Part shown: one piece after another, positions 1 through 34,110 of the stretch
Numbering within the stretch: the first letter of the stretch is position 1
Layout: each line of letters begins with the position of its first letter
NCBI RefSeq assembly: GCF_044704955.1
Contig: NC_091999.1
Coordinates: forward strand, 11,656,001-11,720,000
Direction: 5' to 3'
From: Pristiophorus japonicus
Lineage: Eukaryota
DNA length: 64,000 nt
Made by a program: the position numbers and the translations under genes
The notes under the pieces: generated by a model
Told to the model about the DNA's origin: nothing
What the model saw: the letters and a program-made list of their open reading frames with translations, nothing else
The model's database searches: none

Positions 1-424
1 CCATAGAGAGTGGATGGAGTATGTTGGGCTGTACCCCACTGATGAGTTTATACATTTAGGACGCTCTGATTAATCCTTTCCTGACAGAATTAATGGAGAT
101 TCTGGATCTGCACTCCACAGAGGAGTCAAGCCATTCAGCGCAGTCTGATTAACCCTTGCCTTACAGAATGTATGGATGCTCTGGAAATGTGCCCCACAGC
201 AGTAACAGCAGAAATCCAGCCTTTCTTTCCTGTAGCAGACAGTAGCAATGCGGCGACTCAGCATCTGGGTTGTTTGGCAGGCATTTCTGCAAATCCAAGC
301 TGACTGCAGTCTGCATCCTTATACAAGAATGGTTCCACATTTAGAGTCTAGGGCGTGAATGAAACCCATATCAACGTTCTGTAACCTGGAAGCACAGGAT
401 TGCTAAAGCGTTTACTGTACGTAA

Positions 425-805
425 GAAGGTAAGAATTAAGAGTGGGATTAGGCTATGCGGCTATAAGATCATTGCTGATCTTCGACCTCAACTCCACTTT
501 CCCACCTGTCCCCCGCATCCCTTGATTCACCTCAAGACAAAACCTCGATCTATCTCAGCCTTGAATAGATTCAACGACTCAGATTCCACAGGCTTTTGTT
601 GTAGAGAATTGTCAAGATTCATTACCCTTCGAGTGAAGAAATTCTTCCTCATCTCGGTGTTAAATGGCAGACCCCTTGTTCTGAGATGATGCCCCCATTT
701 CTGGACTCTACAGCCAAGGGAGACAACTTCTCAGTGCCTACCCTGTTAATCCCCTTCATATACTTACATGTTTCAATGAGCTCACCTCTCATTCTTCTAA
801 TCTCC
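425..805 (-). mobile_element. CR1 LINE 3' fragment
   Basis: Minus strand encodes the RT C-terminal motif RRMRGELIET followed by a CR1-type 3'UTR; homologous to 9545-9962. Confidence 0.85.
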
Positions 806-1706
806 AGAGGCCGCAGAATTATTTCGGGGTCGTTTCTTTCTCTATAATTCTGTTGGTTTTGCAGGAGTCTGTGGGGTTCTGGCAGGATTTCCTTCCACTG
901 CAATGTATAAGGCAGCTAGTGAAATGTGGGCCAATCGCGGTGCAACTTTCGACAAAATTTAAGAATTACATGGAATGTACAGCACAGAAACAGCTGATAG
1001 AATCAGAGAACAATTAGGAAAAAGAGAAGAGAAATTTTTAAAGGAAGTGAAAAATGAAAAGAGCTCTAAACTTAGGTAGAGGAAAACAAAGTGAAAGTAT
1101 GAAAGAAAGAATGAGAAAGACAAAGAGAAAAGCTGTGCAATGATGAGAGTGCAGAGGACAGCAAATGACAAAAAGGGGAAAGAGAAATGAAAGGTGATAA
1201 GTAACGAGAGAAGGATAGCGGTAATAAGTAAGAGGAAGCCATAAATATGCTCAGAAATAAAGTAAAATATCCTTTCCTTTATATTAACTCACATTTCCCT
1301 TCCGCATATTTAGACAGTTGAATTGTCTGAAACAATAGTTTTCAAATCACTGAGCAGTGGAAAGCACCCTATCGATGAACTCACACATTTCTCTGCCCAT
1401 TATCCTGACTGTGTGGCTACTCAGAGTCACCGTCAGAGGGCGCCGTGGTCACATATTTCTCGCCGTTATCAACTGGAAATTACATTGACAAATCTTGCAG
1501 TAACACTGCCCACGGCACCCCCGCCCACAGCTTCCATCTGCCGCTCTCGCTCTGACGGCCCTTGCCAGCCCTGTGTTATTGGAGAGATTGCTGCCGCTGC
1601 TCCCTGTTTGAATTGTTTGGATCAGCAGTGCAGTGCCGCGGGGATCTGTAACTCTGCTCCCACACAGGATTTCCAGGACTGCAGAGTTACAGACTCAGGC
1701 AGCGTC

Positions 1707-2205
1707 ATGTGGAACCGTCTCACACTGCTCCTCACCGATGTATGACTTCTCAGTAAGTATTTCCTTCGCATTAAAAATGATTTCTCCCCCGCCTGCTGTA
1801 GCTCAGGTGTTATTATTGGTAAAATGATATGGATGGTTATGATTATGTTGACTGAGATGACGGTGATGATGATCATGATGACATTCTATTATTTTCTGCT
1901 AGAATGGAGCCAACAAGACAAAGTGGAACAGCCGGTCCGTGATATGATGGTTGTGGAGGAAAGTAATGTCACACTAACCTGCACCTTGAAAACCAGCGAA
2001 ACTGCATCTCTGTGTTCTGGTACATTCAGCACCCCGGGAAGCCTCCACAGTACGTGCTTCGTTTTATCAGAGTGAATGTAGACCTTAACCCCGCCTTTAC
2101 TGATCAATTCTCTTCTACGTTTAATAAAATTGTCAAGATTACCGAGCTAACGATCGGCAAAGCCCTGATCTCTGACACAGCCGTATATTTCTGCGCCATG
2201 AGACC
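1707..2205 (+). pseudogene. TCR alpha/delta-type V pseudogene (V1)
   Basis: 46-nt leader exon 1707-1752 (MWNRLTLLLTDV*, in-frame TGA) then GTAAGT; acceptor AG 1901-1902; V exon VTLTC..FWYIQ..DTAVYFCAMR with a 1-nt frameshift near 2010. Confidence 0.92.
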
Positions 2206-2245
2206 CACACTGCTGCAGAGTTAGAGTGGAAACCGTACAAAAACC
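2206..2245 (+). promoter_or_regulatory. RSS of V1 (CACACTG-24-ACAAAAACC)
   Basis: Heptamer 2206-2212, consensus nonamer 2237-2245. Confidence 0.93.
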
Positions 2246-2634
2246 CACACTGAGAGTTCCAGTTGCTGCGCACAAGAGGGCGCTCTCACACCGATAATCA
2301 GAATCAATAATTCTCCACAGCCAGAGTCACAGGGAGATTCTTAAAAGCGCGAGAAAACAAAACCCACGACAAGTCTCCCCTTCTGCTTCTGGCTTCACTC
2401 TTGAAGACAGCCTCTAGCTAAAAGAATCTCCGTGATTCCGGTCTGAAAATAGATGTTCAAACGGGGAAAGAAAATAGTGTCGAGTCTTTGCAATTCAGAT
2501 CGTAAACATGTTGCAAATTAGAGAAAAGAGGAAATGTATTGGTTCCATCATCATTACCTCCATCAATTTAACAATAATAACACCAGTGAAGGGAGAGGGG
2601 GAGAATGGATTTTCGCTGGGAAAGTAATACTTAC

Positions 2635-2680
2635 TGGGAAGCGATATAATGATGAGGAGCAGTGCGAGATGGTTCCACAT
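2635..2680 (-). pseudogene. Orphan V leader exon (V1 family); no V exon found
   Basis: MWNHLALLLIIISLP then GTAAGT, followed by sequence like the V1 intron; no Ig-V motifs further downstream. Confidence 0.8.
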
Positions 2681-3854
2681 GATACTCCCTGAGTCTGTAA
2701 CTCTGCATTTAGCCTAACTCGCAGTATTACTTTAAATTGAAGTGTGGGAGTTGAACCTGGGTCACGGATTCAATGCATAAAAATTAATTTTAGGACTGCT
2801 ATCACGAAGTACTTCGCACACACACATCAATGTCTCCCATATAGAGGGAAATACTCTATCATAGTTTAAGGAAACGTTTGAAACTACAATGAGGGGTGGC
2901 AGTTAGGATCTCTCTGGATAGATCAGGCAAGACCAACCAAGATCTGGTGAACTGCAAAACGGCGGAATTTGTATCTTGTAGTGACAGGTAGTCACCATCA
3001 GAGGGAGCGGGCAGATGTATTCACTCTTGGTTTCAGTGTGAGGGCGAGGTGCAGATGGTCAAAATCGTTCAGTTCCTTCGTTTAATATTTAAAATTAAAA
3101 TTTTTAAAGAATTATTAATGACTTACTATAGGTATTGTAATGATCAGCTCACCATTGTACCACTGATCCACCCGCTGCTTGCATCCTCCTATTCTGCTGA
3201 AAAATGTCAGTAATTTCCAATTTCATTCATATAACACGTGGCGTTTGTATAATTTACCATATCGTTGTGTTCAAAAGCCCCAACATTCGCTGGCTGTCTA
3301 TATTAACCTGTATATCAGCAGTGGGTAAAACTAATGGTAAGTGAGCAGCTCCTGTAATGGGAGCCTCTACTGATACCTCCACAACATTAACTGTTTCCCT
3401 TTAATGCCCCCACATTATAGATTGCATCAGTTTAGCGAATTGAGACTCCGTTGCATTTGAAAACAGTGGACGATTTGATTTTCTGCCCAAACGTGAAATT
3501 TATGTTTTAATCAATTCAAGGACCAATACTCATCAGTTAAAAGAGTATCAAGTAGATTGCACCGAGGGAACGTGGCTGGTCTGATTGTGTCCAGAAAGAG
3601 AAGCAAGATATGATAAGTATGCAACCTGTGACTCAGGGATGAGCGAGTGCAGCTCGTCATATGATCCTCAGGAATTGTCTGACTGGTTATTAAAAGTTTT
3701 GGTACATTACGGAGACCTAATGAAGCCAAGTCTGGAATAATTTGCATCGAGTCCGTTCTTCATTTATCTCAAAATATCGACCCATGAACATACATCAACA
3801 TCCTCCTCAAGGTTTTAATCATTGTGTGCCCGTCCATGTTTATTCTAGTATTTG

Positions 3855-4090
3855 TGGTCTGTGTGTGTTTTAGTGTGTGTCTATCTATATTTATGTGTTT
3901 GTGTGCGTGTGTCTGAGTGTGTGAGTGTGACTGTGTGTATGAATTGTGTGTGAGTCTGTTTTTGTGAGTTTGTGTGTATGTGTGTTTGAGTTTCTGTGTG
4001 TGTGCTTGAGTGTGTCTGTATTTCGGTGCTTGTGTCGGTGGTTGTGTTTGTGTTTGTGTCTGTGTGCGGGTGTCTGGTCATGTGCTTGTT
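3855..4090. repeat. (GT)n-rich degenerate microsatellite
   Basis: Visible low-complexity TG run. Confidence 0.9.
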
Positions 4091-4667
4091 TCCAATCCTC
4101 TGTGTCAGGCTTGTATTGGACACAATGGTGCGCTCCCTGATCACTTGTTAAAGACCTTGCATCTCAAGCAAAGCACCAACTAAATATACGTCAATAAAAT
4201 CCAAAGATATCAAACATTGTCTGTATTTTTGCTTATGTTGGTGTGTGTGTAATCTATTGTGTTAAGACTGCAACTATTAATGGGATGCATTGACTGCAGG
4301 AAATTCCGCACCTTATTCCATGTTAATGAGAGAAAGTTAGAGAACGAACGAGAGGAATAGACAGAGAGAGAGAGAAGGAGACTGAGAGAGAGAGAGAGAG
4401 AGAGAGCAAGAGAAAGAGAGAGGTTGTGACACAGATAGAGATACCGAATAGACATAGATAAAGGGAGACAAAGACACACACAAATAGTCAATGAAAGACT
4501 TTGGAGAGATTGGGCACAACTAACACTCATTGGTGCAAAGCTGAAGATAGTTGTGAGAGACCAGCCAACCATGTCCCTGGGAAACGCCCCTCAGTTTCTC
4601 AATAATGAAGCCTGCCCTGATTTGTGTTTAAGTCTGTTATTTTCTGTTGGACTCTACTCCAGGCACC

Positions 4668-5108
4668 ATGTATGTCCTACATTCCTTCTTGATAATAATA
4701 GTCGTGTTGCCCGGTGAGTCTATGTTTAAAAAGGCAGTGTGTGTTTCATGATTTCAATTCACTCCCAGAATTTTGACGCATTCTGAATTTTGTAACAGGA
4801 ACGAAAGGCGAAAATTCTGTGTCCCAGGATCCGTCAGAATTAAAGGTTCAGGAGGGACAGTCCATAATACTGAATTGCAGATACTCCACATCCGATAACT
4901 TTCCCTACCTCTTATGGTATATCCAGGATCCCGGGGAAGCTCCGAGATATTTACTGAAGAGATACGGCAAAGAGGGGCAGGCGGATCAGTCTCCAGATCT
5001 CCCAGACCGTATCTCTGCTGATTTGGACCAAGAAAACAAATCGGTTCTTTTAAATATCTCCGGGGCTCTTGTCTCTGTTTTTGCCATCTATTATTGTGCG
5101 CTGCGCCT
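4668..5108 (+). CDS. TCR alpha/delta-type V segment (V2), intact; exons 4668-4713 and 4799-5108
   Basis: Leader MYVLHSFLIIIVVLP/GTGAGT; phase-1 intron; IILNC..LWYIQ..AIYYCALR open frame (conserved D of DxAxYYC replaced by V). Confidence 0.93.
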
Positions 5109-5147
5109 CACACTGTTAGAGGGGCTCATTCAGCCCATACAAAAACC
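5109..5147 (+). promoter_or_regulatory. 23-RSS of V2 (CACACTG-23-ACAAAAACC)
   Basis: Heptamer 5109-5115, nonamer 5139-5147. Confidence 0.95.
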
Positions 5148-5519
5148 AGCAAAAGACTCTCATCTCCTCTCACTGAATTAGATCTGTGACCTGGATTGTT
5201 AACTAGCAATGGAATATAAACCAAAGGATAAAGACTAGTTTCGCCGAATGACGAATTTTTCTGCTGTAGACTCTGTGAAATTCTATGCAATATCACCTTG
5301 ATATTAGCTGCTTCTAATGGTCAATGAGCAGCTCTTTTAAAGGGAGCCTGTGGCCCTGATACCTGAACAACGTAAACTATATCCCGTCACTGCTTCCGCC
5401 GCATCTACTGCCCCTGTTAACATTGAGTTTAATCCCCTGTTTAATGGCCAAAATTGGATTTAATCCACATGCAGGACTCTGTTGTGAACATTTTTTCACT
5501 CCTTTCCCTGCTGCCCTCT

Positions 5520-5930
5520 CTGACGTCGTGAATTGCAGAACAAACAGTCTGTGAGCTGATTGGATGAATTGGCGCACACAGCGCTGTGAGCAGATTGGTT
5601 GACATGGGGTACAAAGGGCTGTACGATGATTGGATGAATTGGAGGACAAAGGAGCTGAAGTCTGATTGGCTGAAATGGCGAACAAGAGAACTGTGAAATG
5701 ATTGGATCAATTGGAGAACACAGGACACGTGAGTTAATTCTAGATCACCTGCTGACACTGTCAGGAATGATCCAATCAGCAGAGAGGCCGGATATTAGTC
5801 AACATCTCCCCACTCTTGACGAAAAACATTTTCGGGTTCAACCCGTTCTGTTGAAATCCGCCATCAAACATGTTGGATGTTACTTTTTATTTGATCATCA
5901 CAGCTGCAGCTTTCTTAATTGGTAAGTTCA
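5520..5930. repeat. ~38-bp tandem repeat rich in ATTGG plus unique tail; second copy at 16970-17390
   Basis: Repeated GCTGATTGGATGAATTGG..ACAAAG units; shared downstream GTTxAACCCGT..AAATCxGCCATCAA. Confidence 0.8.
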
Positions 5931-6453
5931 CAAGTTGCACAACACTGTGTTGCACATCTACATCATACATTATAATTAATCGGGCACTGCCCTGAACACA
6001 AAAATATCAACAGATTGATTCAAGTGAAGACCATCATAATGCACCGTGACTCAACACTGAACACGGTTTGGGGAAACTCGCCAAAATCCCCCAGTGAGTG
6101 AAAGCGTTTGAGTTCAGATGAGATTTCAGGTGAATGACCGACAGACTCGTCTCATCTGCCGGTACCAGTGACGGACTTTGACAGACACAGGGGTGTAAAA
6201 ACCACAGATCGATTGTACATTTCCCTTCACTTCACAAGGGGTGACGATGCAGAATTGATCCAGCTGAAAGTTCATTAAAGGAAATGTTATTCAGTCGATA
6301 CAAGCACTTTCCCGTTGCAGGTGTGGCGAAATATATTTCTGTTTAACTGCCCAGAGTTACTTCGCAGTTAAGTGTTGGAGTGACGAGGTGATTCTGGGAT
6401 ATGACACAGTGAAGTGACACTGTTTAATTTAATATCACTCTGGGCTCTTGCAG

Positions 6454-6760
6454 GATATTGTCGAGGAGACTCCGTTTCACAGACACCGGATGCAACCACA
6501 GTAAGTGAAGGAGATGATATCCAGTTGCATTGTAATTATACAGCTACAAGCGACAGCAATCCTTCTGTATTCTGGTACCGTCAGTATCCCAGCGGATCCA
6601 TAGAATATCTGCTGCAGAGAAACAAATACAGCCACAATGAGGAGAGATTTCCAGTGGACCGTTTTTCAGCGAAGCTCAATGATTTGAGCCGAACCGTCCC
6701 ACTGAATGTGTCTGAGACACAACTGACAGACTCCGCGGTGTATTACTGCGCACTGAGACC
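6454..6760 (+). CDS. TCR alpha/delta-type V exon (V3), open frame; leader doubtful
   Basis: TTGCAG acceptor; GDSVSQ..IQLHC..FWYRQ..DSAVYYCALR; candidate leader 6321-6366 begins GTG rather than ATG. Confidence 0.9.
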
Positions 6761-6799
6761 CACAGAGACACAGAGCTGGGCTGGACCTGTACAAAAACT
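6761..6799 (+). promoter_or_regulatory. 23-RSS of V3 (CACAGAG-23-ACAAAAACT)
   Basis: Heptamer 6761-6767, nonamer 6791-6799. Confidence 0.93.
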
Positions 6800-6964
6800 G
6801 TCAGAGCGTTGCTCAACATATCAGCGTGTGAGGGGAACATTGTGATCGGGGAATATCTGAGCTAATCCCTACATTTATGGTCGGACATTGTACTGTTAAT
6901 TGTCATTCGTATTCACCTTTACTCATAAAAATATATCTTGGGGGCACACAAATGAAACGGGAGG

Positions 6965-7345
6965 AAAGAAAGCAAAAGAAAGACATCGCACGCATACAGC
7001 GTCTTTTACGACCTCGCGATGTCGCAAAGCCCTTTACAATAATTCCACTACGTTTTAATAGTGTAGTTAATGTTGTAATGTAGGAAACACGGCTGCCAAT
7101 CTGTGCACAGCAAAATCCCATAGCGAGCAATATTTTTTATGATAGTCTGTTTTTAGTGATGTTGATTGAGGGATAAATATTTGCTAGGACACAGGGGAGT
7201 ACTCCTCTGCTCTTTGTCGAAATAGTGGCAATGAGATATTTTGCAAACACCTGAGAGTGCAGACAGGAGTAACGTCTCATGCAAAAGACTCCATCTCCAA
7301 TAATTCAACATTCCCTCACTACTGCACTGAAGTATCAGCCAAGAT
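6965..7345 (-). mobile_element. Deu-domain SINE (SacSINE1-like), 5'-truncated
   Basis: Reverse complement resembles the recalled shark SINE body (..ATTGGCAGCCGTGTTTCCTACATTACAACA..) and its 3' tail. Confidence 0.75.
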
Positions 7346-7926
7346 AAATATATATATATATAACACCAATGCAGAGCGAATGTCATATGACATTACAGAG
7401 GTAACCTGGCTGATAACTGGCAGGCAGGTATAAAATGGCCGCTATGGCCTCGGTTTCTCTGAGCAAGGGGTCCAGTTTGTGTCAATGCAGCTGCACACAG
7501 AAAGGAATCACTGGAATCGGGGCATGCAGGAGGATATTTAAGTGTAAACATGAATGTCACAGGAGAATCAACCTAATGCTCTCGATGAATCGTCACACAC
7601 CAGCATAAAATAAACCAACACTCAGCAAAGTGATTGACTCGGGCCTGGTGAATATAATCCCACCCTTAAGCAATGCTAAAGCTTTACTCACAACAAAGAC
7701 GGCACTCACTGAGCGACTGGCTCCACAAGCCGAGACTTTATGCTGTGACTGTCGGTATCTGTGATCCAACCCGCTGTCAACTGGAAATTATAGAGACAAA
7801 CCTTGAGGTAACAGTGTCTACGGCAGCCCTGCCCTCAGCTTCCGTTTGCTGCTCTCGTTGTGACCCGCTTTGCCTGCCCAGTGTTATTGGAGAGATTGCT
7901 GCAGCTGTTACGGGAAGTAGGATGGC

Positions 7927-7965
7927 GGTTTCTGTAAAGTGACTGCCGCGTTTCCTCCCAGTGTG
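7927..7965 (-). promoter_or_regulatory. 23-RSS of V4 (CACACTG-23-ACAGAAACC)
   Basis: Heptamer 7959-7965, nonamer 7927-7935. Confidence 0.9.
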
Positions 7966-8946
7966 TGACTCTATCGCACAGCGGTATCCGCGCTCTCCGA
8001 GCTCTCAATGACCAATAGGCCGCGTTTGTCTGCAGTAAAAAGATCCACTTAAAATCGGCCCCTTCTCTCCCTGCCAGCTGATAGTCGCATTATTATCCAC
8101 TCGAGTCCCTGTCTGGATTTCAGTTTGTACCAGTGCATTGCGTAAATGCTGGAAGTGTCATAGCTGCAGTTAATCTGCACCGAAACCCCGCTCCGAACTG
8201 TTATTGCAGCCGGAGACTGCCGCATTCGGTCCGAGAGACACCGACCTCTAAAATCACTGAGATAATAAAATACTGAAGCAACATGAGTAATAAATAGAAA
8301 CATAGAAATGTAGAAAAGAGGTGCAGGAGTAGGCCATTCGGCCCTTCGAGCCTCCAACACCATTCAGTAAGATCATGGCTGGTCATGCAACTTCAGTATC
8401 CCTTTCCTGCTTTCTCTCCAAACCCCCTGATCCCCTTAGCCGTAAGGGCCACACCTAACTCCCTCTTGAATATATCCAACGAACTGGACTCAACAACTTT
8501 CTGTGATAGAGAATTACACAGGTCCACCAATCTCTGGCTGAAAAAGTTTCTCCTCATCTCGGTCCTATATAGCTTACCTCTGGACTTCCCCAACATCTGG
8601 AACATTCTTACTGCATCTAACCTGTCCAGTCCCTTCGTAATTCTATATGTTTCTATGAGGTCCCCTCTCATTCTTCTAAATTCCAGAGAGTATAAGCCGA
8701 GCCGATCCAGTCTTTTTTCACATGTCAGTCCTGCCATCCTGGGAATTAGTCTGGTGAATCTTCGCTGCACTCCCTCAATAGCAAGTACGTCCTTCCACAG
8801 ATTAGGAGACCAAAACTGCACACAATACTCAAGGTGTGGTCTCACCAAGGCCCTGTACAACTGCAGTAAGACCTCCCTGAGGGCTATTGCGCTCAACTCC
8901 TGTACCTATATGTTAGCAGCAGCAGAATAACGGGGAATAGATTCAT
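7966..8946 (-). pseudogene. TCR V pseudogene (V4) with a CR1 in its leader intron
   Basis: Leader MNLFPVILLLLTY starting at 8946; V exon from ~8247 (MRQSP..VQINC..MHWYK..GRF*); TAA at 8049-8051; YYC missing after DTAV. Confidence 0.88.
8293..8879 (-). mobile_element. CR1 LINE 3' fragment in the V4 intron
   Basis: ORF 8393-8896 LYRALVRPHLEYCVQFWSP..RRMRGDLIET; (TTTCTATG)n tail. Confidence 0.95.
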
Positions 8947-9544
8947 TTGTACCGAGTAATACATCCTGGCAATTACCCAATGTTAAGAAGAAAGTGGCAC
9001 ACAGCTCGCATCAGAAGACCCCGAACCGAGTGAACAGGCGGCTTATTAAAGTTAGCGCCGCCTAGTTTAAGTCTCAGTCACGTGTGTTTGCTGCTCTTGG
9101 ATTGACTGGAAATGGACATTGTTCACCCACGGTTCACATCCAGACATGTGATCTGATTACCTGCAAGTTTCTCTCCTCCTTGTGGAGGGAAGTGACGTGA
9201 AACCAATCCCTTTGTGATAGTCATTCTCTCAAGGGACATTCCTGGCGCTGTGTGTTTGGAATCACGTGAAGCCCTTGATAACTCTTTCCACACAGAATGT
9301 ATGGAGGCTCTGGAACTGCGCCCCACAGCAGCAACAGCAGAAATCTAGACGTCCTTTATCGAGCAGACAGTAGCAATGCGGCTACTCAGCATCTGGGTTG
9401 TGTGAGAGGCATTTCTGAAAATCCAAGGTGGCTGCAGTCTACGTCCTTATAGGAGAATGGTTCCACATTTAGAGTTCGGGGCAGAAATGACACCCATATC
9501 GAGGTTCTGTAACCGGGAAGTACAGGATCATTAAATAATTTAGT

Positions 9545-9962
9545 GTACATAAGAAGATAAGAATTAAGAGTGGGATTAGGCCATATGGCCATGTGAGCCT
9601 TCTCCGCCATTCAATAAGATCATAGCTCACGTTCGACCTCAACTCCACTTTCCCCCCTGCTCCCGCATCCCTTGATTCACCTCAAGTCCAAAACTCATCT
9701 ATCTCATCATTGAACATGTTCAACGACTCAGGTTCCACAGGCTTTTGGTGTAGAGAATTGCCAAGATTCACTACCCTCCGAGTGAAGAAATTCCTCCTCA
9801 TCTCGGTATTAACTGGCCTAACCATTATCCTGAGATGATGCCCCCTAGTTCTGGATTCTACAGCCAGGAGAAACAACCTCTTACCACCTACCCTCTCAAT
9901 CCCCTTCAGAATCGTATATGTTTCAATAAGATCACCTCTCATTCTTCTCAACTCCAGAATGT
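9545..9962 (-). mobile_element. CR1 LINE 3' fragment
   Basis: ORF 9682-9951 RRMRGDLIET..RRNFFT. Confidence 0.9.
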
Positions 9963-10147
9963 GTAGATTTATTTCAGGATCATTTAATTCTCTATAATTC
10001 TGTTTGTGTTACTGGAGTCTGTAGTTAACCGTGACTCCTGTGAACTTTCACTCACGGGTCAGTTCAGTGGTGAACTAACAATGAAACCGAATTTTATGGA
10101 AATGATTATTGATCCTTGATATAGAACGATGACATTTGATGTTGCTG

Positions 10148-10566
10148 AACAACCAACAACAATTTGTATCTACATAGCGCCCTTAACATAGTAACATCCC
10201 AAGACGCTTAACATTAGTATTGTGAGATAAAATATTTGACGCCGAGCCTCATAAGGAGAAATTAGGGCAGGTGACCAAAAGCTTGTTCAAAGAGGGCAAT
10301 ATTAAGGAGCGTTTTGAACGACAGGTAGAGAGGCGGTCGGTTTAGGCTGGGAATTCGAGAGCTTAGGTCCGAGGCAGCAGAAGGCATTGCCACCAATCGT
10401 TGAGCGATTATAATCAGGGATGCTCAAGAGGGCAGAATTAGAGGAGTGCAGACATCTCGGTGGGTTGTGGGGCTAGAGGCGATTTCAGAGGTAGGGAACG
10501 GCGAGGACATGAAGGGATTTGTAAACAAGGATGAAAATGTTGAAATCGAGGCGTTGCTTAACCGGG
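10148..10566 (-). mobile_element. L2-clade LINE 3' fragment
   Basis: Reverse complement ends GGGCGCTATGTAGATACAAATTGTTGTTG, an L2-type 3' tail similar to the SINE tail. Confidence 0.65.
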
Positions 10567-11551
10567 ATTAAACCCCTGTATGAAGTGTAGGGCGTGTTCA
10601 ATCCCTAGGATGAGGTGTGCGCCAGGTTCGCGTTAACAAGAGCCCAGCACCAGCAGGGCGTAAAACACTGTCCTTACAAGTTTCTCACATATTAGCAAAG
10701 GATGGGGCGCAGAAAACAAAACAAAATACAGGCAGCCTCGGTTTGCCTTCCACCCCTTTAACATCGATCTCCACCATCGGTACAGTTAATGGTTCAGAAA
10801 GCAGATCTCAGGGTCTGTTCTTCATTTACATTTTAATATTCCATCCCCCATCTTCCATACACTTCTTCTCACTTGGCCTGTCTAATAGTGAGTAACAGAA
10901 GCAATCCTTCGATATGATTGATGCCTTTTTGTGATGAGAATTGCCAGAGTTATCGACCCAGCCCATTGTGCATTTCAAATATGAATCTTCAATTCATTAC
11001 AAAATTGATACAAATGTTGGAGAAACTGCATTTAACTCACTGCTCAGGGACAAAGCTAAAAAAAAAGAATATTGGGACCTGACGCCCTCTGATGGTTATT
11101 CTGAAAACTGTACAGATGTCGATGGACAGGGTGTGAGAAATTGTGTGTGTATTCACTGACCTGATGCCATTCCTCGCTCTGGGAAGCCGGGTTGGAGCAC
11201 TTCGGAATTAAGATGCTGAGCAGCAGCAAAGACTTTACATCATTCAAAACAGATTGGAATAAGAAAATTCATAAGGTTCTGGGTAAAGAGTAGAGACAGG
11301 GGATGAGAAAGGAGAGGCAGGCAAGGAATGGGCATCGAATGGCAGAAAGTTTATTCTGGCATGATTTTTAAGTGTACTTTTTGTCATTTTCAAATCATTA
11401 AATATTATAATTCCACCAGTGGTCTTCATCTTTTCATGTTGAGTATTCTATTTTGCCTGCCTTTTTAGAAGGTCCCTGAGACTGAATTATTGCTTCTGGT
11501 TATCGGTGTGAGAGAGCCCTCTAGTGAGCACTAGCTGGAACTCCGATGGTG

Positions 11552-11591
11552 GGTTTTTGTACGGGATCCACGATACCTCTGCACCAGTGTG
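11552..11591 (-). promoter_or_regulatory. RSS of V5 (CACACTG-24-ACAAAAACC)
   Basis: Heptamer 11585-11591, nonamer 11552-11560. Confidence 0.92.
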
Positions 11592-12079
11592 GGGATCATG
11601 GCACAGAAATACACGGCTGTGTTGGAGATCAGAGCTTTGCTGATCATTAGCTCGGTAAACTTGATAGTGTTATTGAACCTACAAGAGAATCGGTCAGTGA
11701 AGTCAGGGTTCCTGTTGACTATCCCAGCATAGAGATACAATACGAACTGTGGAGGCTGCCCGGGGTGCTGACTGTACTAGTACACATAAGAGGCAGTGTT
11801 GCTTGTTTTCAAGGTGCACGTTAGTGTGACATTACTTTCCTCTTCAATCATCATTTCAGGAATTGTCTGCTCCACTGTATCTTGGTGGCTCCATTCTAAC
11901 ATAAAGTAACAGTAATAGGCATCGTCATCATCAACTCGATCAACATAATCATCAGGATCATTTAACCAATTATCACTTCGGGTTTGCAGCATTCAGGAGG
12001 AGAATGGATTTGCAGTGGGAATGGAATACTTACAGAGAAGTGATACAATGATGAGGAGCAGTGCGAGACGGTTCCGCAT
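11592..12079 (-). pseudogene. TCR V pseudogene (V5), inverted paralogue of V1
   Basis: Leader 12034-12079 MRNRLALLLIIVSLL; V exon from 11895; conserved Trp codon is TAG (11777-11779); splice junction T+AA would also give a stop; ends NTAVYFCAMI. Confidence 0.92.
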
Positions 12080-12855
12080 GATGCTCCTTCAGTCTGTAAC
12101 TCTGCAGTCCTCGAAATCTTCTGTCGGAGCAGAAATATAAATCGGTGCCCCACTGCACTGCTGATCCAACCAATGCCAAAGAAGGAACAGAGGTGGCAAT
12201 CTCTCTAATTACACAAGGCGGGTCAGAGCGAAAGCAACAAATGAATCTGTTGACGCCGCTGCCGGGCAGTGTTAAGGCGAGTTTTGTCTCTAAAACTTTC
12301 AGTTGATAAACGGCAACAAAAATGTGAACATGGTGCCCTCTGGCGGTGATGATGAGAACTGTACATTTTCAGGATAATGGCCAGAACATAGTCGGAGTTA
12401 ATCGATGGCGCAGTTTCCAGATTCCGCGTTTCGAGAGAGACAGTTCAGACAAATAAACTGTGTAAATAGGTGTACGGGTAATATCAGTGAGCTTGAAGGA
12501 AAGGGTATTGTACTTGATTTCTTAACCTCTTTCTTTATGGCTTTCTGTTACATTTAACATTTCTGTTTTTCACTCGTTACTTCTCACTTTATTGCATGTC
12601 TCTTTCATCCTTCCTTTATTTGCCGTGCGCTGCACCTATTATTACATTGATTTTTCACTTTCGCTCATTCTTTCGTTAGCACCTTCTCTTTGTCTGTGTT
12701 TCTAACTCTCTTCATTTCAGAATTTTGTTAAATCTCTCTCTTCCACATTTCCTCTCTTTTTCTGTGCTCAGTCCCTCTGCCCTCCGGTTATTATAATCAC
12801 CCTCTCCTTATCCCGTTACTTGAAAGAGAGCAGCGCGGTGCTCCCGCTCGGTGCA

Positions 12856-12894
12856 GGTTTCTGTGCGGACTCTATGCCTGTTTGTTACACTGTG
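12856..12894 (-). promoter_or_regulatory. 23-RSS of V6 (CACAGTG-23-ACAGAAACC)
   Basis: Consensus heptamer 12888-12894, nonamer 12856-12864. Confidence 0.95.
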
Positions 12895-13231
12895 GGCTCA
12901 CGGCGCAGAGATAGGTGGCACTGTCTGTCACTCGCGCAGTTCTCACGGTCAGGGTGCTGAGTTTATTGCCTCCCTCGAGTGAAGCAGTGATCCTCCCGTG
13001 TTGATCGGCCCCACTTGTGGCCATCACCAGGTGCTGGAGGGTCTGATTCGGTTGCTGTCTGTACCAGCGCAGGACAGTAAATGCAGCGGTAGTGCTGCAA
13101 TTTATAGACACGATTCCCTCTTCATTAACACCCACCGACCGAGGGAGCTGCTTCACCTCATTATCTCCGCTCACAACCGTGCAGATCAGAGCATAAATCA
13201 GCAGGGAAACTCTGTCAATCCGGAACACCAT
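12895..13231 (-). CDS. TCR alpha-type V segment (V6); leader and V in one exon
   Basis: Continuous frame MVFRIDRVSLLIYALICTVVSG-DNEVKQ..VSINC..LRWYRQ..DSATYLCAVS; a further in-frame ATG at 13261. Confidence 0.9.
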
Positions 13232-13399
13232 CGGATCAGGCGGAAAGGAGGCTGAAAGCATTGTACACGCAGGACGGATTGCTCCTAGGGTAGGGATATT
13301 ATATTCAGGAGAATTAACAAGGAGAGAGATAACAATTCAGAGGTTTATTCCTGTCGAACTAACGAAACAAGCTTTTCGTAGGTTTACCCAACCCGGGCC

Positions 13400-13997
13400 A
13401 TCACACTCAGTGTTTCTCACGAACAGCAGCTCACACTGTCTCTGAGCTCACACCCACCATTCACACACAGTATTTTTCATTGACAGCAGTTCATAATGTC
13501 TCTGAGCTCACACCGGGCCGCCCACGCTCAGTGTTTCTCACTGACAGCAGCTCACACAGTCTCTGAGCTCACACCCACCGCCCACACTGAGTGTTTCTCA
13601 CTGACAGCAGCTCACATTGTGAGCCCACACCCATCGTCCACACTCAGTGTTTCTCACAGACAGCAGCTCACACTGCCCCTGTGCTCACCCCGAGCCACCC
13701 ACAGTCAGTGTTTCTCACTGACAGCAGCTCACACGGTCACTGAGCTCACACCGGTCCGCCCACACTCACTGTTCCTCTCTGACCGCAGCTCACACTGTCT
13801 CTGAGCTCGCACCCAGCGCTCACACTGAGTGTTTCTCACTGACAGCAGCTTACACTGTCTCTGAGCTCACAGCGGGACGCTCACACTCAGTGTTTCTCAC
13901 TGACCGCAGCTCACACTGTCTCTGAGCTCACACCCACCGCTCACACTCAGTGTTTCTCACTGACAGCAGCTCACACTATCTCTGAGCTCACACCGGG
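13400..13997. repeat. ~60-bp minisatellite, about 10 copies
   Basis: Unit TCACACTCAGTGTTTCTCACTGACAGCAGCTCACACTGTCTCTGAGCTCACACCCACCGC. Confidence 0.95.
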
Positions 13998-14982
13998 CTG
14001 CAGTTCAACCGCCCCTCCTCACTTTCATTTGAGCCCTATTTTTGGAATCATACTCTGTAATTTTTAAAACACAGTTTACAAATTGTTCGACAGCAGTGTC
14101 GCTTCACATCCCCCTCCGGTGGCTGTTGTCTAAATCTCATTCAAACTTTCGGTGTACTGAATGTAACGTGGATTTGTCTGTCAGGACACCGCGAGATTTT
14201 TCACCCGTTTTTATGTGCCTTATATAATACAGAATCGAGACACTCTTTAGGAATTCATCCTCAATAAATTTTAGAAGCTTAAAACACAACAAAGGCTCCC
14301 TGCACCCTTTAATAATTCTCTAATACCTCACTATGCTTCCTTTATAAAATAATAATTGATGGAGTCTACATCACAAACAGCGGCTGACAGAGTATTCCCC
14401 GTTCTGACCTCCCTTAAATGAGAATCCATTTGAAGAATACATTTCAATCGAAGCTTTTTGCCATTTCGAGCATTTCTGGGATGTGTCTGACATTGTGGGT
14501 GAGGCCGGTAATGGAGAGACGGAATCCTCCCCCACTCCCAGCATCAGATGATGAGATGTGCGGGACAAGGCAGGCCAGCACATGGAGCCTGTGTGCCGGG
14601 GCCACGAGCAGTGATGATGAACACAGACAGCTGCAATAATCACCGGCAGCTCATTGAGACCAGGTTCCGGGTTTGATTCCAGAAATTTCGGGGACTGCGT
14701 GTGCTGACGGAAACACTTCAAATTCTTCCCTTCATTCCGAAAGCTGCAACTGAGAGGAGGCACCGTATGAAGTGCGGCGTCCCAGTGTGGGGAGACTGCC
14801 GCTATTATGGAGTCTATCCATCTATCCATTTTATTGCCTCTAAACATGCCTGTCAACTTGTCTGCCCGCCAGCCTGTGTCACTCGATCTATCTGTCTGTC
14901 TGTCTTTCTTTATTTCCTTATGTCTGTCTCTATGTCTCTGTTTATTAACCTGCCTAACTATCAATATCTAGCCATTAATCTG

Positions 14983-15408
14983 ATGCTTGCTCGTTCTGGC
15001 TCTTCGTCTCCCTGTATATATTCAAAGTGATAGACAGATATATTCTCAAAGAAAGAGAAGCGTGTGGTCTGTGCTTTACGCTGTTTCCATGGGTAACCAG
15101 GATTGTTTTATGCAGGATTAAGTTCTGGAGACCTTCGATCAGTGGCCTACAGAAGACCAATAACTGGAAGGAACCTCAATGAGCATTACTTGTAACAATT
15201 GCACCGCCCAAGTGATCTACTACTTCGAGCTTTACCGTCAGAGCCAGTACAAGGCTCCCACTCTCGTAATTCGAATACATTCCTATGGAAAGAACGAAGT
15301 TAACGGCGGTTTCTCTGGCATTCTGAAAAAGTAGAAAACTATCGCTGTTGTCACCCTGACTGAGCTGCAGCTCGCAGACAGCGCCGTGTTCTACTGCGCA
15401 CTGAGGCC
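14983..15408 (+). pseudogene. TCR V pseudogene (V7) with decayed RSS
   Basis: Frameshifted leader near 14983; acceptor 15114-15115; MSITC..YRQ..LADSAVFYCALR with two stops; heptamer CATAGTG 15409-15415; nonamer degenerate. Confidence 0.88.
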
Positions 15409-16061
15409 CATAGTGAGAAGGGCCTCGGGACATCTCGTATTGCAATCGTGTTCTGTGAGATCAGCTCAATGGAGATGCTATAATCCCGGCCACCAGGTGG
15501 CGCTGACAGAGCACGAATTCCAACGCCAGTCACTTGACATCAACCAATACTGACTAACGCTTTCTCAATGTAAATTAAGGTGAAATTATGTTTTAAATTA
15601 TATTTATGCCCATTAATGTTTTGCAATCCATTATAGTTTAATAATTTTAGACGTTCTGGATCGATTGCAGTTTTGTTCTGTTTCCCACCGCCAGCTCCAG
15701 CCCTTGGTTACAAACCACTTCACTGATGACGATTTAATTAACTGTTGAAGAATATAATCCTGAAATTCCTATCGCTGGCCTGTTTGCCTAAAATTTTTAA
15801 CGCATATGAAAGTAGCACAGCCCTTTCAGGAGGCAGAATTATATCATTTCAGAAGGGACATTATTATTTAATTCTGTCCTCACAATTGGATCCTACGTGT
15901 GCCAACACTGCCCGTGGCAACCCGCCCACAGCTTCCGTTTGCTGCTCACGTTCTCACCTACCTTGCCTGCCTTGTGCTATTGTAGAGATTGCTGCCGCTG
16001 TTCCCTGTTTGGCATTGCAGTGCATCGGGGATCTGTATTTATGCTCCGACAGAGTACTTCC

Positions 16062-16539
16062 CACTTATATTAAGGTAACCATACTTTCTAGACGTGTCAG
16101 CAGCCGCCTGACAATGTCCTGAGATTTTATCTCCCTTCAGTGCTACTGCTTTGTTAATTATCCAGCTTGGAGGCTGTGCCGGTTTCTGCCACTACCATTG
16201 CCTGGTGTTTATAACCACGGCTGTGTATTCGCAATCTAACTCCACAGAACCCCCTGCTGGCACCGCAATTGTCATCGCAGATTGTATTATTGGATCTGCA
16301 CATAGTCCGCCTGTGAAGATAGGGGAACAGAAGAGCAGAAGGTTAAATCTAAACTTGTGTCTATCTGTTCGAGAGTGTATCACCGTCCATCTACACAGCT
16401 GTCCCTCATTTGAATATATATCTGGTCGGTAATTGAACGAAATCCCTGCACAAACTCTTTGCATCAATCTGCTAACCCGTGTTTATAATGTAATCCCGTA
16501 CTTACTGTCCAACAGGGCCGCCAGTGTTATTAGAAACAT
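16062..16539 (-). pseudogene. 3'-truncated TCR V pseudogene (V8)
   Basis: Leader MFLITLAALLD/GTAAG; exon from 16310 (DPIIQS..SVELDC..QW*WQKP..YGYLNISG); no second Cys and no RSS. Confidence 0.82.
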
Positions 16540-17619
16540 GTCCGACTGAATCCCTTTCAGTGACTTGGAATTGACTGAGGCATAGATTGAGAAGGAGAGA
16601 GTTAACCCGGGGCCTGTTCAACTCATTGTTCCTCCCACACTCTGCATCGTACGGCCTCATTTTGACCTCATTCAGGCTTCAATCGCTATTGGCTTTGGCG
16701 TTTGTAATACGTGTCTTTCTAATTGCAGTTCTTGAGTTTAGCGCTCTCTTCTGGCAGATTGGGTTACATCCGGCTTAGTATGAGGTCACTGAGGCGATTT
16801 AGAGTTTATGGTCATATATAAAAACTCGAGTGGCAGATATTGTCTCTCAAATATCAAGGTTGCAGATGATCAATTCGTTCATGATTTCTCATGCGGTGTA
16901 ATTCCTTAATTACGCTCTCATTCTACCTGTTCCCAGTCACTTGCTCAGTAAGCAGGAGGAGATTGACCACAGACGTGATGAAGTAGCGAACAAAGGAGCT
17001 GTGTGATGAGTGGATGAATTGGAGAAGAAAAGAACAGTGAGCTGATTGGATGAATTGGAGACCAAAGTAGCCGTGAGCTGATTGGGTGAATTGGTGAAAT
17101 GGCAGCTGAGAAATGATTGGATGAATTAGATTAAAAAGGAGCTGTGAGTTGCTTGGCTGAATTGGAGAACAAAAAGATGTGCGTTGATTGGATGTCACCT
17201 GTTTGACGCTGTCAGGAATGAACCAATCGGCAGAGATGTCAGATATCATTTAATATCCATCCAAGCCTTGAGTAAAATATTTCAGGTTGAACCCGTCTTG
17301 CTCAAATCTGCCATCAACTCTCTGCAAACATGTTGGCTGTTACTTTATATTCAGTTGTCACACTTGCGGCTCTCTCAACTGGTAAAGGCTACAAATTACA
17401 TTATCTTCTCTCTCGCATGTGTGACTGACATAGAGAATCTTCACTTTACCTGTATTTTCCCTCTATTTGCTGTATATTCCATTACCTTGATGATATCAGT
17501 TATAATAAAAGGATAATAAAAGTATAAAATTGCCTATTTCTCAATGTCTGCAAGTGTTAGTTGTGTATACTCGGACACAGAGGGGCTGGTAACATCGATT
17601 CATTTTGAAGCAGATGTGG

Positions 17620-17820
17620 TTTCTCCCTACTTGCTCCTCATAATTTTGAATACTTCTATTAGGTCTCTCCTTAATCTTCTATGCTTTCAAGTGTACAATC
17701 CCAGCTTCTCCAATCTCTCCACATAACTGACGTCCCTATCGCCTGGTAAACCTCATTGTACCCTCTCCAGGTCGTTGACATCCTTGCAAAAGTCTGGTGC
17801 CCAAAGTTGTAGACAATAGA
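17620..17820 (-). mobile_element. Old CR1-like LINE fragment
   Basis: Degenerate match to the RT C-terminal region. Confidence 0.55.
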
Positions 17821-18062
17821 GAAAGGACAAAAGGGGAGTGAAGGTGGCTAACACCTCATTTGGGCAGTACGTTTTTATTATAAATACGAGTTGAAATCAT
17901 CAACAAATTCCTCATGAGGACTTCACCTGTTTTGTTGAATATTGTGACTTGTTACTCTTTTAAGGATGTTCCCATGACTTTCGCTGTCGGTGCTGAATTA
18001 TCACTTCTGTGTATCTGTATAAGAGCGCACTCTGGCGGGCGCTAACTGGAACTCTCAGTGTG

Positions 18063-18102
18063 GGTTTTTGTACGGAATCCGCTATATCTCTGCAGCAGTG
18101 TG
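18063..18102 (-). promoter_or_regulatory. RSS of V9 (CACACTG-24-ACAAAAACC)
   Basis: Heptamer 18096-18102, nonamer 18063-18071. Confidence 0.93.
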
Positions 18103-18531
18103 GGGCTCATAGCACAGAAATACACAGCGGTGTCGGAGACAAAAACTCCGGTGATAGTTAAAGGAACCGTTTTGTTGTCCTTGTGCAAAACAGCAGAGAA
18201 CCTGTCTGGGAAATCTGGAGACTGCTCTACCATCCCCGAGCTATATATCTTCAGTAAATATCTCAGAGTTTCCCCGGAATACTGGATGTACCAGAACAAA
18301 GTTGAACCAGCTTCCGAGTAACTGCAACTCAGTATTATGGTCTTTCCTTCTGTAACCGTAAATTCAGACGGATCCTGGGACACTGATTCTTGGCGACTCG
18401 TTCCTGTAAATATAGAGCATATATGAAAATCTGGGTGTAAACATAACCCATGAAACACACACTGATTATTTTCACATCTACTCACCAGAGAGCATGAAAA
18501 TTATTATCAGAAAGGAAAATACTGAGAACAT
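18103..18531 (-). CDS. TCR alpha/delta-type V segment (V9), intact; exons 18486-18531 and 18103-18403
   Basis: Leader MFSVFSFLIIIFMLS/GTGAGT; TTTACAG acceptor; IILSC..LFWYIQ..DTAVYFCAMS open frame. Confidence 0.94.
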
Positions 18532-19234: not shown

Positions 19235-19332
19235 TGTTTCTGTAACAGGCCCGAGATGCCCTTATTCGCTGTGGGTCTCAGAGCGCAGTAATACTCGGCG
19301 CCGTCTGCGATCTTCAAACCTTTCATGGATAT
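19235..19332 (-). pseudogene. 5'-truncated V fragment (V10) with 23-RSS (CACAGCG-23-ACAGAAACA)
   Basis: ISMKGLKIADGAEYYCALR; heptamer 19267-19273, nonamer 19235-19243; a short CR1-like piece abuts the truncation. Confidence 0.85.
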
Positions 19333-33700: not shown

Positions 33701-34110
33701 TTTGGTTTCTCTGCCCTCCACCTTTTCTTTTCTTCTTTCTATCTTTTGCTTCTGCTCCCATTCTACTTCCCTCTGTCTCCCTGCATAGGTTCCCATCCCC
33801 CTGCCATGTTAGTTTCACCCCTCCCTAACAGCACTAGCAAACACTCCCCCGTGGACATTGGTTCTGGTCCTGTCCAGGTTCAGACCGTCCGGTTTGTACT
33901 GGTCCCACCTCTCCCAGAACCGGTTCCAATGTCCCAGGAATTTGAATCCCTCCCTTCTACACCACACTTCAAGCCACGTAATCATCTGAGCTATCCTGCG
34001 ATTCCTGTTCTGACGAGCAGGTGGCACTGGTAGCCATTCTGAAATTACTACCTTTGAGGTCCTACTTTTTAATTTAATACCTGGCTCCCTGAATTCAGCT
34101 TGTCGGCTCT
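30765..34110 (-). mobile_element. CR1 LINE inserted in the tRNA-array spacer
   Basis: ORF2 RT (QGSVLGP, KFADD) and the ORF1 C-terminus (KPDGL). Confidence 0.93.

What the first reader, a model, noticed from the sequence alone, without database searches (positions are those of the whole stretch)
1430..18038. CTCF-consensus motifs at fixed distances from V RSSs and promoters, flipping with each V gene
Seen: GCACAAGAGGGCGC (2270-2283), TCACTAGAGGGCTC (minus, 11514-11527) and CCGCCAGAGTGCGC (minus, 18025-18038) each lie 24 nt beyond the nonamer of V1, V5 and V9. A perfect CCACCAGGTGGCGC (15490-15503) lies ~40 nt beyond the RSS position of the unrelated V7. CCGTCAGAGGGCGC (1430-1443) and CCGCCAGAGGGCAC (minus, 12333-12346) lie ~260 nt upstream of V1 and V5. 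All six point in their gene's sense direction. Established: the CTCF core is CCRSYAGRKGGCRS; RSS-adjacent CTCF elements at mouse proximal Igh VH genes stall cohesin-driven RAG scanning; mouse Tcra/d V promoters bind CTCF. Inference: a loop-extrusion/CTCF logic for choosing V segments may already operate in a cartilaginous-fish TCR locus. Caveat: the V1, V5 and V9 3' sites are homologous, so they are not independent.
Basis: partly seen in the sequence, partly recalled or inferred. Interest (0 to 1): 0.8.

Follow-up and report, generated by a model that had tools for sequence, protein, structure and literature searches.

The report
CTCF-type motifs in shark TCR V array
A 19-kb stretch of shark T-cell-receptor V gene segments holds about 14 times more CTCF-type binding motifs than chance predicts, all on the sense strand of the neighbouring V genes, much as in mouse antigen-receptor loci. 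Only sequence evidence supports binding, and most of the sites next to recombination signals sit behind dead genes.

Summary
All six motifs are at the stated coordinates, on their V gene's sense strand, at the stated distances. Only two match the quoted consensus exactly.

A whole-window scan adds five more sites. In bases 1-20,000 there are 11 sites of at least 11.9 bits against 0.8 expected. These represent 7 independent lineages (Poisson P about 2e-5). The other 44 kb, rich in LINE fragments, shows no excess.

All 7 lineages are co-oriented with the V genes of their orientation block. Several also carry a CTCF upstream-motif-like element at the correct spacing.

Limits:
- V1/V5 are one inverted duplication, and V9 shares their 3' cassette, so the fixed 24-nt distance is inherited.
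- Intact V2, V3 and V6 have no site next to their RSS.
- Three of the four RSS-adjacent sites follow pseudogenes. The V9 copy is mutated at a near-invariant G.
- Orientation that flips with the V unit is what descent predicts, not what a locus-wide scanning logic requires.

Verdict: these are probably real CTCF elements carried by V units. A role in V choice is unproven. No binding, RNA or cross-species data could be obtained. This scan has already noted the same RSS+CTCF module in other windows of this genome, called a sawshark in those notes.

The parts
1427..1445 (+). CTCF-type site upstream of V1 (14.8 bits). The core 1430-1443 ends 263 nt before the ATG at 1707.
1707..2205 (+). V1: leader ATG at 1707, V exon about 1903-2205. 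TCR alpha/delta type. A frameshift in CDR1 makes it a pseudogene.
2206..2245 (+). V1 RSS: heptamer, 23/24-nt spacer and a perfect nonamer.
2251..2285 (+). V1 3' cassette site. An upstream-motif-like AGTTCC lies 6 nt before the 19-nt core window 2267-2285 (15.0 bits). The core starts 24 nt past the nonamer.
2992..3010 (+). Intergenic CTCF-type site (12.7 bits) of the same sequence subtype as the V1/V5 promoter sites. Its flanks are unrelated to theirs.
4807..5147 (+). V2, an intact V-set exon, with its 23-RSS (5109-5147). No CTCF-type site within 100 nt of the RSS.
6462..6799 (+). V3, intact, with its 23-RSS (6761-6799). No adjacent site.
7927..8240 (-). V4, a VH-like pseudogene (GLEW motif) with a stop and a truncated FR3, plus its 23-RSS (7927-7965). 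No adjacent site.
11080..11115 (-). Orphan composite site: core window 11080-11098 (14.2 bits) plus an upstream-motif-like element. It forms a 36-nt island, 27/36 identical to the V5 promoter site, with random-level flanks.
11512..11546 (-). V5 3' cassette site: core window 11512-11530 (11.9 bits), with AGTTCC 6 nt upstream. The core starts 24 nt past the nonamer.
11552..12079 (-). V5 unit: RSS 11552-11591, V exon 11597-11890 with an in-frame stop, ATG at 12079. It is an inverted duplicate of the V1 unit.
12331..12366 (-). V5 promoter-side composite site: core window 12331-12349 (20.1 bits, exact consensus) plus a 7/10 upstream-motif match after a 5-nt linker. It lies 253 nt before the V5 ATG and about 510 nt behind the V6 RSS.
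12856..13171 (-). V6, intact, with its 23-RSS (12856-12894). No site within 100 nt of the RSS.
15179..15448 (+). V7 pseudogene, with an in-frame stop and a degenerate RSS.
15487..15505 (+). Near-perfect CTCF site (26.1 of a maximum 27.6 bits), about 41 nt past the V7 RSS position. Read depth indicates single copy.
16245..16263 (-). Intergenic CTCF-type site (14.1 bits), convergent with the site at 15487.
16739..16757 (-). Intergenic CTCF-type site (15.3 bits).
17756..17774 (-). CTCF-type site (12.1 bits), about 270 nt beyond the V9 cassette site.
18023..18057 (-). V9 3' cassette site: core window 18023-18041 (12.0 bits), with T at a near-invariant G of the core and AGTTCC 6 nt upstream. The core starts 24 nt past the nonamer.
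18063..18398 (-). V9, intact, with its RSS (18063-18102). The body is V2-like (72% identity). The last 35 nt, the RSS and the flank are V1/V5-like (78-81% identity).
19235..19330 (-). V10 fragment: only the FR3 end and an RSS survive. No adjacent strong site; the nearest, at 18796-18814, scores 9.8 bits.
34011..34029 (+). The only site of at least 12 bits outside the V cluster (13.75 bits). It has an 8/10 upstream-motif match at a 5-nt linker.

Best explanation
Bases 1-19,300 are a piece of a shark TCR alpha/delta V array. It holds about ten V segments in four orientation blocks (+ + + / - - - / + / - -). Four V segments are intact and six are broken.

The CTCF-type motifs are most likely genuine CTCF-binding elements that were part of ancestral V duplication units. 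One type lies about 260 nt upstream of the leader ATG. A second type begins 24 nt past the nonamer and includes an upstream (ZF9-11-type) half-site. Further elements are intergenic.

The elements were copied, converted and inverted together with their V units. This explains both the fixed distances and why orientation follows V sense.

If bound, each would block cohesin arriving from its 3' side, which is the V-sense side. Sites in deletional-orientation units would then face the J-C recombination centre, as mouse V-region elements do. Sites in inverted units would face away.

Shown here: motif excess, co-orientation, position, and a footprint-sized island of similarity. Inferred: CTCF occupancy, cohesin stalling, and any effect on V choice.

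In this window the RSS-adjacent copies look partly decayed.
For: - Excess: 11 sites of at least 11.9 bits in 20 kb against 0.81 expected. Seven lineages give Poisson P = 2e-5.
- A consensus scan that does not depend on the PWM agrees.
- There is no excess in the LINE-rich 44 kb.
- Orientation: 7 of 7 lineages are co-oriented with the V genes of their block (one-sided P = 0.008).
- RSS adjacency: 4 sites, 2 lineages, lie within 100 nt past a nonamer on the sense strand. P = 0.016 even against the locally high density.
- Two sites are of high-affinity type, at 20.1 and 26.1 bits.
- Upstream motif: 7 of 11 V-area sites (4 of 7 lineages) match at least 6/10 of CTGCAGTTCC at a 4-7 nt linker, against a null of 0.089. 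AGTTCC is invariant in the V1, V5 and V9 cassettes (consensus and linker from PMC12885311).
- Sites 11080 and 12331 share a 36-nt island (13/17 in the upstream motif and linker, 14/19 in the core) inside flanks at random-level identity.
- DNA contigs of the species reproduce the sites with no listed variants.
- The CTCF motif and its orientation code operate in a skate (PMC10115646).
- The polarity equals that of mouse V-region elements (PMC5859386; 10.1101/2020.01.01.891473).
Against: - No binding, accessibility, methylation, looping or usage data exist. No RNA run holds the region.
- The PWM was recalled from memory, although the consensus scans agree with it.
- In the V1/V5/V9 cassette the core is no better conserved than its flanks, and each copy has a hit at an informative core position. 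V9 has T at a near-invariant G.
- Intact V2, V3 and V6 lack RSS-adjacent sites. Three of the four carriers are pseudogenes.
- The orphan V1-type promoter copy at 7771-7907 has lost the motif although its neighbouring 137 nt are 81% conserved.
- Upstream-motif matches are individually weak (P 0.02-0.09), and the strongest core site (15487) has none.
Confidence: 0.55

Rival explanations
1. Passenger relics. One or a few ancestral motif-bearing flanks were multiplied by V-unit duplication, gene conversion and inversion. The extant copies are mostly unbound or irrelevant to recombination, and the pattern reflects descent rather than selection.
For: - V1 and V5 are one inverted duplicate, 73.6% identical across 1.2 kb that include both motifs. 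V9 received the same 3' cassette.
- The motif core is not more conserved than its flanks.
- The carriers are mostly pseudogenes and the intact V genes lack RSS-adjacent sites.
- An orphan promoter copy lost the motif.
- Orientation tied to V sense is automatic under unit inversion.
Against: - Seven lineages without detectable flank homology still give a 9-fold excess (P = 2e-5), all co-oriented.
- A footprint-sized island is conserved at 11080/12331 with random-level flanks.
- The upstream motif is enriched at the correct spacing.
- Two sites are near-optimal.
Confidence: 0.3
2. The conserved post-RSS and promoter elements are bound by a factor other than CTCF, for example an E-protein at the CAGGTG inside the 15490 site or another zinc-finger protein. 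Alternatively they serve germline transcription or promoter function rather than loop extrusion.
For: - The 15490-15503 core contains a CAGGTG E-box.
- Eight of the V-area sites share the narrower AGAGGG form, tighter than the CTCF matrix requires.
- The V1/V5 sites sit at promoter distance, about 260 nt from the ATG.
Against: - Matches extend over all 14-19 informative positions of the CTCF matrix.
- They include upstream-motif matches at CTCF-specific spacing.
- The AGAGGG form is a common CTCF variant and is also explained by shared descent.
Confidence: 0.1
3. A chance or compositional artefact of a GC- and CpG-richer V region.
For: Several individual sites score only 12-15 bits.
Against: First-order Markov and dinucleotide-shuffle nulls built on the same 20 kb give 0.7-0.8 expected against 10-11 observed. 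None of 200 simulations reached the observed count.
Confidence: 0.03

Closest known systems
RSS-adjacent CTCF-binding elements of mouse Igh proximal VH segments (7183/Q52 and related families)
   Same: The motif lies within 100 bp downstream of the V RSS, on the V sense strand and so pointing toward D-J-C in deletional units. It is family-specific: some V families have it and others do not (PMC5859386 Table 2; 10.1101/2020.01.01.891473).
   Different: Here it is a TCR alpha/delta-type V family in a shark. Only 2 of 7 flank types carry it. The carriers in this window are mostly pseudogenes with sub-optimal cores. V units occur in both orientations, so the elements flip, whereas all mouse VH elements share one orientation. 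No binding or functional data exist.
CTCF sites upstream of V promoters in mouse Tcra/Tcrd and Tcrb
   Same: V1 and V5 carry a site about 260 nt upstream of the leader ATG, co-oriented with the gene. In mouse Tcra/d most V-region sites (129 of 144) point toward J-C (PMC5859386).
   Different: Only one V family in this window shows it. Two orphan promoter copies of the same family lack it.
Mouse Igk V region, which has V segments in both orientations
   Same: The locus has inverted V segments, CTCF sites in both orientations, and joining that cannot rely on linear scanning alone (PMC5859386; PMC12820099 abstract).
   Different: In mouse Igk there is no correlation between CTCF-site orientation and Vk transcriptional orientation. 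Here the correlation is complete across 7 lineages.
Composite CTCF sites with the upstream ZF9-11 motif (insulator or barrier class)
   Same: A CTGCAGTTCC-like element lies 5-6 nt before the TGG-plus-core in the cassette sites and in 12331, 11080 and 34011 (PMC12885311).
   Different: Matches are partial, 6-8 of 10. Significance is modest once homologous copies are collapsed.

Membership tests
CTCF-binding element (vertebrate core motif) | Match to the CTCF core matrix or consensus above genomic background | tested here: met
   Eleven sites of 11.9-26.1 bits, with per-position P from 2e-5 to below 2e-8. The consensus scans agree. The PWM values were recalled from memory as JASPAR MA0139.1.
CTCF-binding element (vertebrate core motif) | CTCF occupancy in vivo (ChIP, CUT&Tag or footprint) | not testable with these tools
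   Only whole-genome DNA runs of the species hold the region. No chromatin or RNA data were found.
CTCF-binding element (vertebrate core motif) | Motif conserved beyond its flanks among homologues | tested here: inconclusive
   In the V1/V5/V9 cassette and the V1/V5 promoter, motif identity is about the same as unit identity, so the test has no power. In contrast, 11080 and 12331 share a 36-nt island with random-level flanks.
CTCF-binding element (vertebrate core motif) | Cohesin co-occupancy or loop-anchor behaviour with orientation dependence | not testable with these tools
   No Hi-C or RAD21 data are available. Only motif orientation could be read from the sequence.
RSS-associated V CBE (mouse proximal VH type) | Site within about 100 bp downstream of the V RSS | tested here: met
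   Met for V1, V5 and V9 (24 nt) and V7 (about 41 nt). Not met for V2, V3, V4, V6 and V10.
RSS-associated V CBE (mouse proximal VH type) | Orientation convergent with recombination-centre-side elements, uniform across the V array | tested here: not met
   Orientation is uniform relative to V sense but alternates along the chromosome (+, -, +, -) with the V blocks. The position of J-C is outside the window and unknown.
RSS-associated V CBE (mouse proximal VH type) | Promotes use of the linked V during RAG scanning | not testable with these tools
   No repertoire or mutational data are available. Three of the four carriers are pseudogenes.
V-promoter CBE (mouse Tcra/Tcrb type) | Site shortly upstream of the V promoter or leader, co-oriented with the gene | tested here: met
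   V1 (263 nt) and V5 (253 nt) only. No site of at least 6 bits lies at the equivalent place of V2 or V3, and only a 9.8-10.0-bit match lies upstream of V6 and V9.

The most novel reading that the evidence does not exclude
A CTCF element coupled to the V segment, both RSS-adjacent and promoter-side, on the V sense strand and sometimes a composite of upstream motif plus core, would be an ancestral jawed-vertebrate feature of antigen-receptor loci. Cohesin/CTCF-guided presentation of V segments to RAG would then predate the split of cartilaginous and bony vertebrates and act in a TCR alpha/delta locus.
Probability: 0.25. Interest if true: 0.85.

Novelty: new member of a known kind. Interest (0 to 1): 0.55.

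Why it matters
V-associated CTCF elements are central to how mouse Igh, Tcra/d and Tcrb loci present V segments to RAG. Nothing in the searched literature describes them outside bony vertebrates: one search found no paper linking CTCF to shark TCR or RSS, and PMC12227049 does not mention CTCF.

If the shark sites are bound, the coupling of loop-extrusion barriers to V segments would date to the origin of V(D)J loci, or would have evolved twice. The mixed-orientation shark array would then be a natural experiment on whether barrier orientation matters for deletional versus inversional joining.

If they are unbound relics, the finding is an ordinary by-product of V-unit duplication.

Tried and rejected
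The other collections hold no shark genomes.

2. Expression and chromatin. The look-up of sequencing runs found only four DNA runs of one sample, plus three small runs of the same species that hold none of the stretch. Read laying confirmed the sequence but gave no RNA or chromatin information.

3. Constraint from paralogues. A sliding-window comparison of V1 and V5 has no power at 68-74% baseline identity.

4. Flank homology. A search for decayed V-unit homology around 2992 and 11080 scored at shuffle level.

5. Promoter-site relic at 2992. An inverted leader relic lies at 2546-2707, but the strand and the offset do not fit it.

The tblastn map was made instead from queries read by coordinate from the window file.

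7. Search syntax. Two pattern searches and two paper searches failed on syntax. The RSS scan was done in a script instead.

Full report
**What is in the window**

An RSS scan, a tblastn with window-derived V exons, a Pfam scan and direct reading give this map of bases 1-19,300:

| V | Strand | Exon | Status | RSS |
|---|---|---|---|---|
| V1 | + | about 1903-2205 | frameshift | 2206-2245 |
| V2 | + | 4807-5106 | intact | 5109-5147 |
| V3 | + | 6462-6758 | intact | 6761-6799 |
| V4 | - | about 7968-8240 | VH-like, stop, truncated | 7927-7965 |
| V5 | - | 11597-11890 | stop | 11552-11591 |
| V6 | - | 12896-13171 | intact | 12856-12894 |
| V7 | + | 15179-15403 | stop | degenerate |
| V9 | - | 18105-18398 | intact | 18063-18102 |
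| V10 | - | FR3 end only | fragment | 19235-19273 |

- FR3 ends such as YFCAMR and YYCALR, together with 23-type RSSs, mark TCR alpha/delta-type V segments.
- Bases 20-64 kb hold LINE reverse-transcriptase fragments and satellites and no V segment.
- Notes of this scan call the genome a sawshark. They place a V array of more than 1.6 Mb before the window. I did not test either statement.

**Checking the observation**

- Two match the quoted consensus exactly (12333-12346 on the minus strand, 15490-15503 on the plus strand). Two have one mismatch and two have two mismatches.
- The 24-nt gap between nonamer and core is exact for V1, V5 and V9.
- The V7 site starts about 41 nt past its decayed RSS.
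- The promoter-side cores end 263 nt (V1) and 253 nt (V5) before the ATG.

**Is it more than chance?**

I scanned both strands with a 19-position CTCF matrix. I recalled its counts from memory as JASPAR MA0139.1, so it should be treated as approximate.

- Eleven sites score at least 11.9 bits in the first 20 kb: 1427+, 2267+, 2992+, 11080-, 11512-, 12331-, 15487+, 16245-, 16739-, 17756- and 18023-.
- Only one such site, 34011+, lies in the other 44 kb.
- First-order Markov simulations of the same sequence expect 0.72 sites of at least 12 bits in the first 20 kb, against 10 observed. None of 200 simulations reached that count.
- The same simulations expect 1.9 in the remaining 44 kb, against 1 observed.
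- A larger simulation gives 0.81 expected at 11.9 bits or more.

**Independence of the sites**

- A self-comparison shows that the V1 unit (1086-2313) and the V5 unit (12693-11484) are one inverted duplication, 73.6% identical. It includes both the promoter-side and the RSS-side motifs.
- V9 has a V2-like body (72%). From 35 nt before the heptamer to about 105 nt past the nonamer it is 78-81% identical to V1 and V5.
- With the five additional sites there are seven lineages with no detectable flank homology to each other.
- Seven lineages against 0.81 expected gives Poisson P = 2e-5.
- All seven are co-oriented with the V segments of their block (one-sided P = 0.008).
- Two of seven RSS flank types carry a sense-strand site within 100 nt. 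This gives P = 0.016 against the locally elevated density and 1e-4 against background.

**Evidence that these are CTCF sites and not just motif matches**

1. Sites 12331 (20.1 bits) and 15487 (26.1 of a maximum 27.6) are near-optimal.

2. PMC12885311 describes an upstream element resembling CTGCAGTTCC. CTCF zinc fingers 9-11 bind it in 13-15% of sites. It is typically separated by a 5-nt linker (range 2-7) from the TGG-plus-core.
   - With linkers of 4-7 nt allowed, 7 of the 11 V-area sites match at least 6 of 10 positions, against a null frequency of 0.089. That is 4 of 7 lineages.
   - The hexamer AGTTCC is invariant in the V1, V5 and V9 cassettes, 6 nt before the 19-nt core window.
   - Site 12331 matches 7/10 and site 34011 matches 8/10.
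   - This explains part of the conserved 24-nt spacer.

3. Sites 11080 and 12331 share 13/17 positions in the upstream-motif and linker segment and 14/19 in the core. All surrounding segments sit at 21-31% identity, and local alignments of the flanks score at shuffle level.
   - The two also share the same departures from the upstream-motif consensus.
   - This fits a relic of a V5-type promoter element of which only the CTCF footprint has survived.

4. Skate TAD boundaries carry oriented MA0139.1 motifs, so the protein and its code are in place in cartilaginous fishes (PMC10115646).

**Evidence against a selected role in V choice**

- In the three-way cassette alignment the core is no better conserved than the 24 nt before it or the 30 nt after it.
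- Each copy carries a change at an informative core position. V9 has T at a G that is nearly invariant in the matrix.
- The V1/V5 comparison shows motif windows at 15-19 of 20 identities against a unit average near 14. Other non-motif windows do as well.
- The intact V2, V3 and V6 have no RSS-adjacent site. V1, V5 and V7 are pseudogenes.
- An orphan copy of the V1-type promoter at 7771-7907 keeps 81% identity over 137 nt, yet the motif position just upstream has decayed. A second orphan at 15904-16061 lacks it too.

**On 'flipping with each V gene'**

- The polarity is the mouse one. Mouse V-region elements point toward D-J-C, which is the V sense direction (PMC5859386).
- However, a barrier that inverts with its V unit points away from the recombination centre in inverted units. 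Inverted RSSs also cannot be used by linear scanning.
- The complete correlation is therefore best read as inheritance of an ancestral rule that all elements lie in V sense, carried through block inversions. It is not independent evidence for scanning.
- In mouse Igk, the mammalian locus with inverted V segments, no such correlation exists.

**Sequence support**

- Logan contigs of four DNA runs from one sample of the same species cover 11001-17000 at 99% identity or more.
- They list no variants inside sites 11080, 11512, 12331 or 15487.
- Depth is about 5-10 times higher over 11401-12200 and 15801-16200. The V5-type exon, RSS and proximal promoter are therefore multi-copy in the genome, while 12201-12400 and 15401-15600 are near single copy.
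- The contigs are at most 1.2 kb, so they do not bridge the block inversions.
- No RNA run holds the stretch.

**Relation to earlier notes and literature**

- This scan has noted the same motif about 24-25 nt behind the nonamer in other windows of this genome, 140 kb to 1.18 Mb before this window. One follow-up reached the same conclusion of motif evidence only. I treat these as leads.
- The held literature has no report of CTCF elements in shark antigen-receptor loci.

**Verdict**

- The sites are probably real CTCF elements that travel with V units (confidence about 0.55). Passenger relics are the main rival (about 0.3).
- A role in V selection by loop extrusion remains an inference.

Noticed in passing
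window 7927-8240 (-): V4 is a VH-like V pseudogene. It has a GLEW-type FR2, an in-frame stop and an FR3 truncated before the Cys, with a good 23-RSS. It sits among TCR alpha/delta-type V segments and is possibly a TAILV-type relic.
   Followed up: partly
window 17957-18517 (-): V9 is a mosaic. The body is 72% identical to V2. From 35 nt before the heptamer through the RSS to about 105 nt beyond the nonamer it is 78-81% identical to V1 and V5. This suggests gene conversion of an 'FR3 end + RSS + motif' cassette.
   Followed up: partly
window 7771-7907 (+) and 15904-16061 (+): Two orphan copies of the V1/V5-type proximal promoter (76-84% identity) have no V exon behind them. The first abuts the V4 RSS head-on. 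Read depth shows this promoter piece is multi-copy in the genome.
   Followed up: partly
window 2546-2707 (-): An inverted relic of a V1/V5-type leader and intron start lies just behind V1. It is 77% identical to V1 1680-1847 and 87% identical to V5 11995-12106.
   Followed up: no
window 2246-2252 and 18056-18062 (-): In V1 and V9 the nonamer is followed directly by a second copy of the V's own heptamer, CACACTG. In V5 this copy has decayed.
   Followed up: no
window 13402-13998: A 61-bp minisatellite of about 10 copies, 81% matching, lies upstream of V6. Its unit contains heptamer-like CACACTG and CACTGAC strings.
   Followed up: no
window 5529-5720 and 16977-17194: The same 36-bp minisatellite occurs behind V2 and in the V9 downstream region. 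The wider regions 5522-5925 and 16972-17385 are 71% identical. They are in direct orientation although V2 and V9 are inverted relative to each other.
   Followed up: no
window 150-872 and 9279-10022: A direct repeat of about 740 bp at 81% identity, probably an interspersed element. It contains no CTCF-type site.
   Followed up: no
window 25292-26146 (-) and 38260-39426 (-): ORF fragments with reverse-transcriptase (RVT_1) matches. The 20-64 kb part of the window is LINE-rich, has strong strand skew and holds a 430-bp tandem repeat at 49652-50592.
   Followed up: partly
window 33991-34029 (+): A lone composite CTCF-type site lies outside the V cluster. The core scores 13.75 bits, with an 8/10 upstream-motif match at a 5-nt linker. 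It could be a boundary element flanking the V cluster.
   Followed up: no
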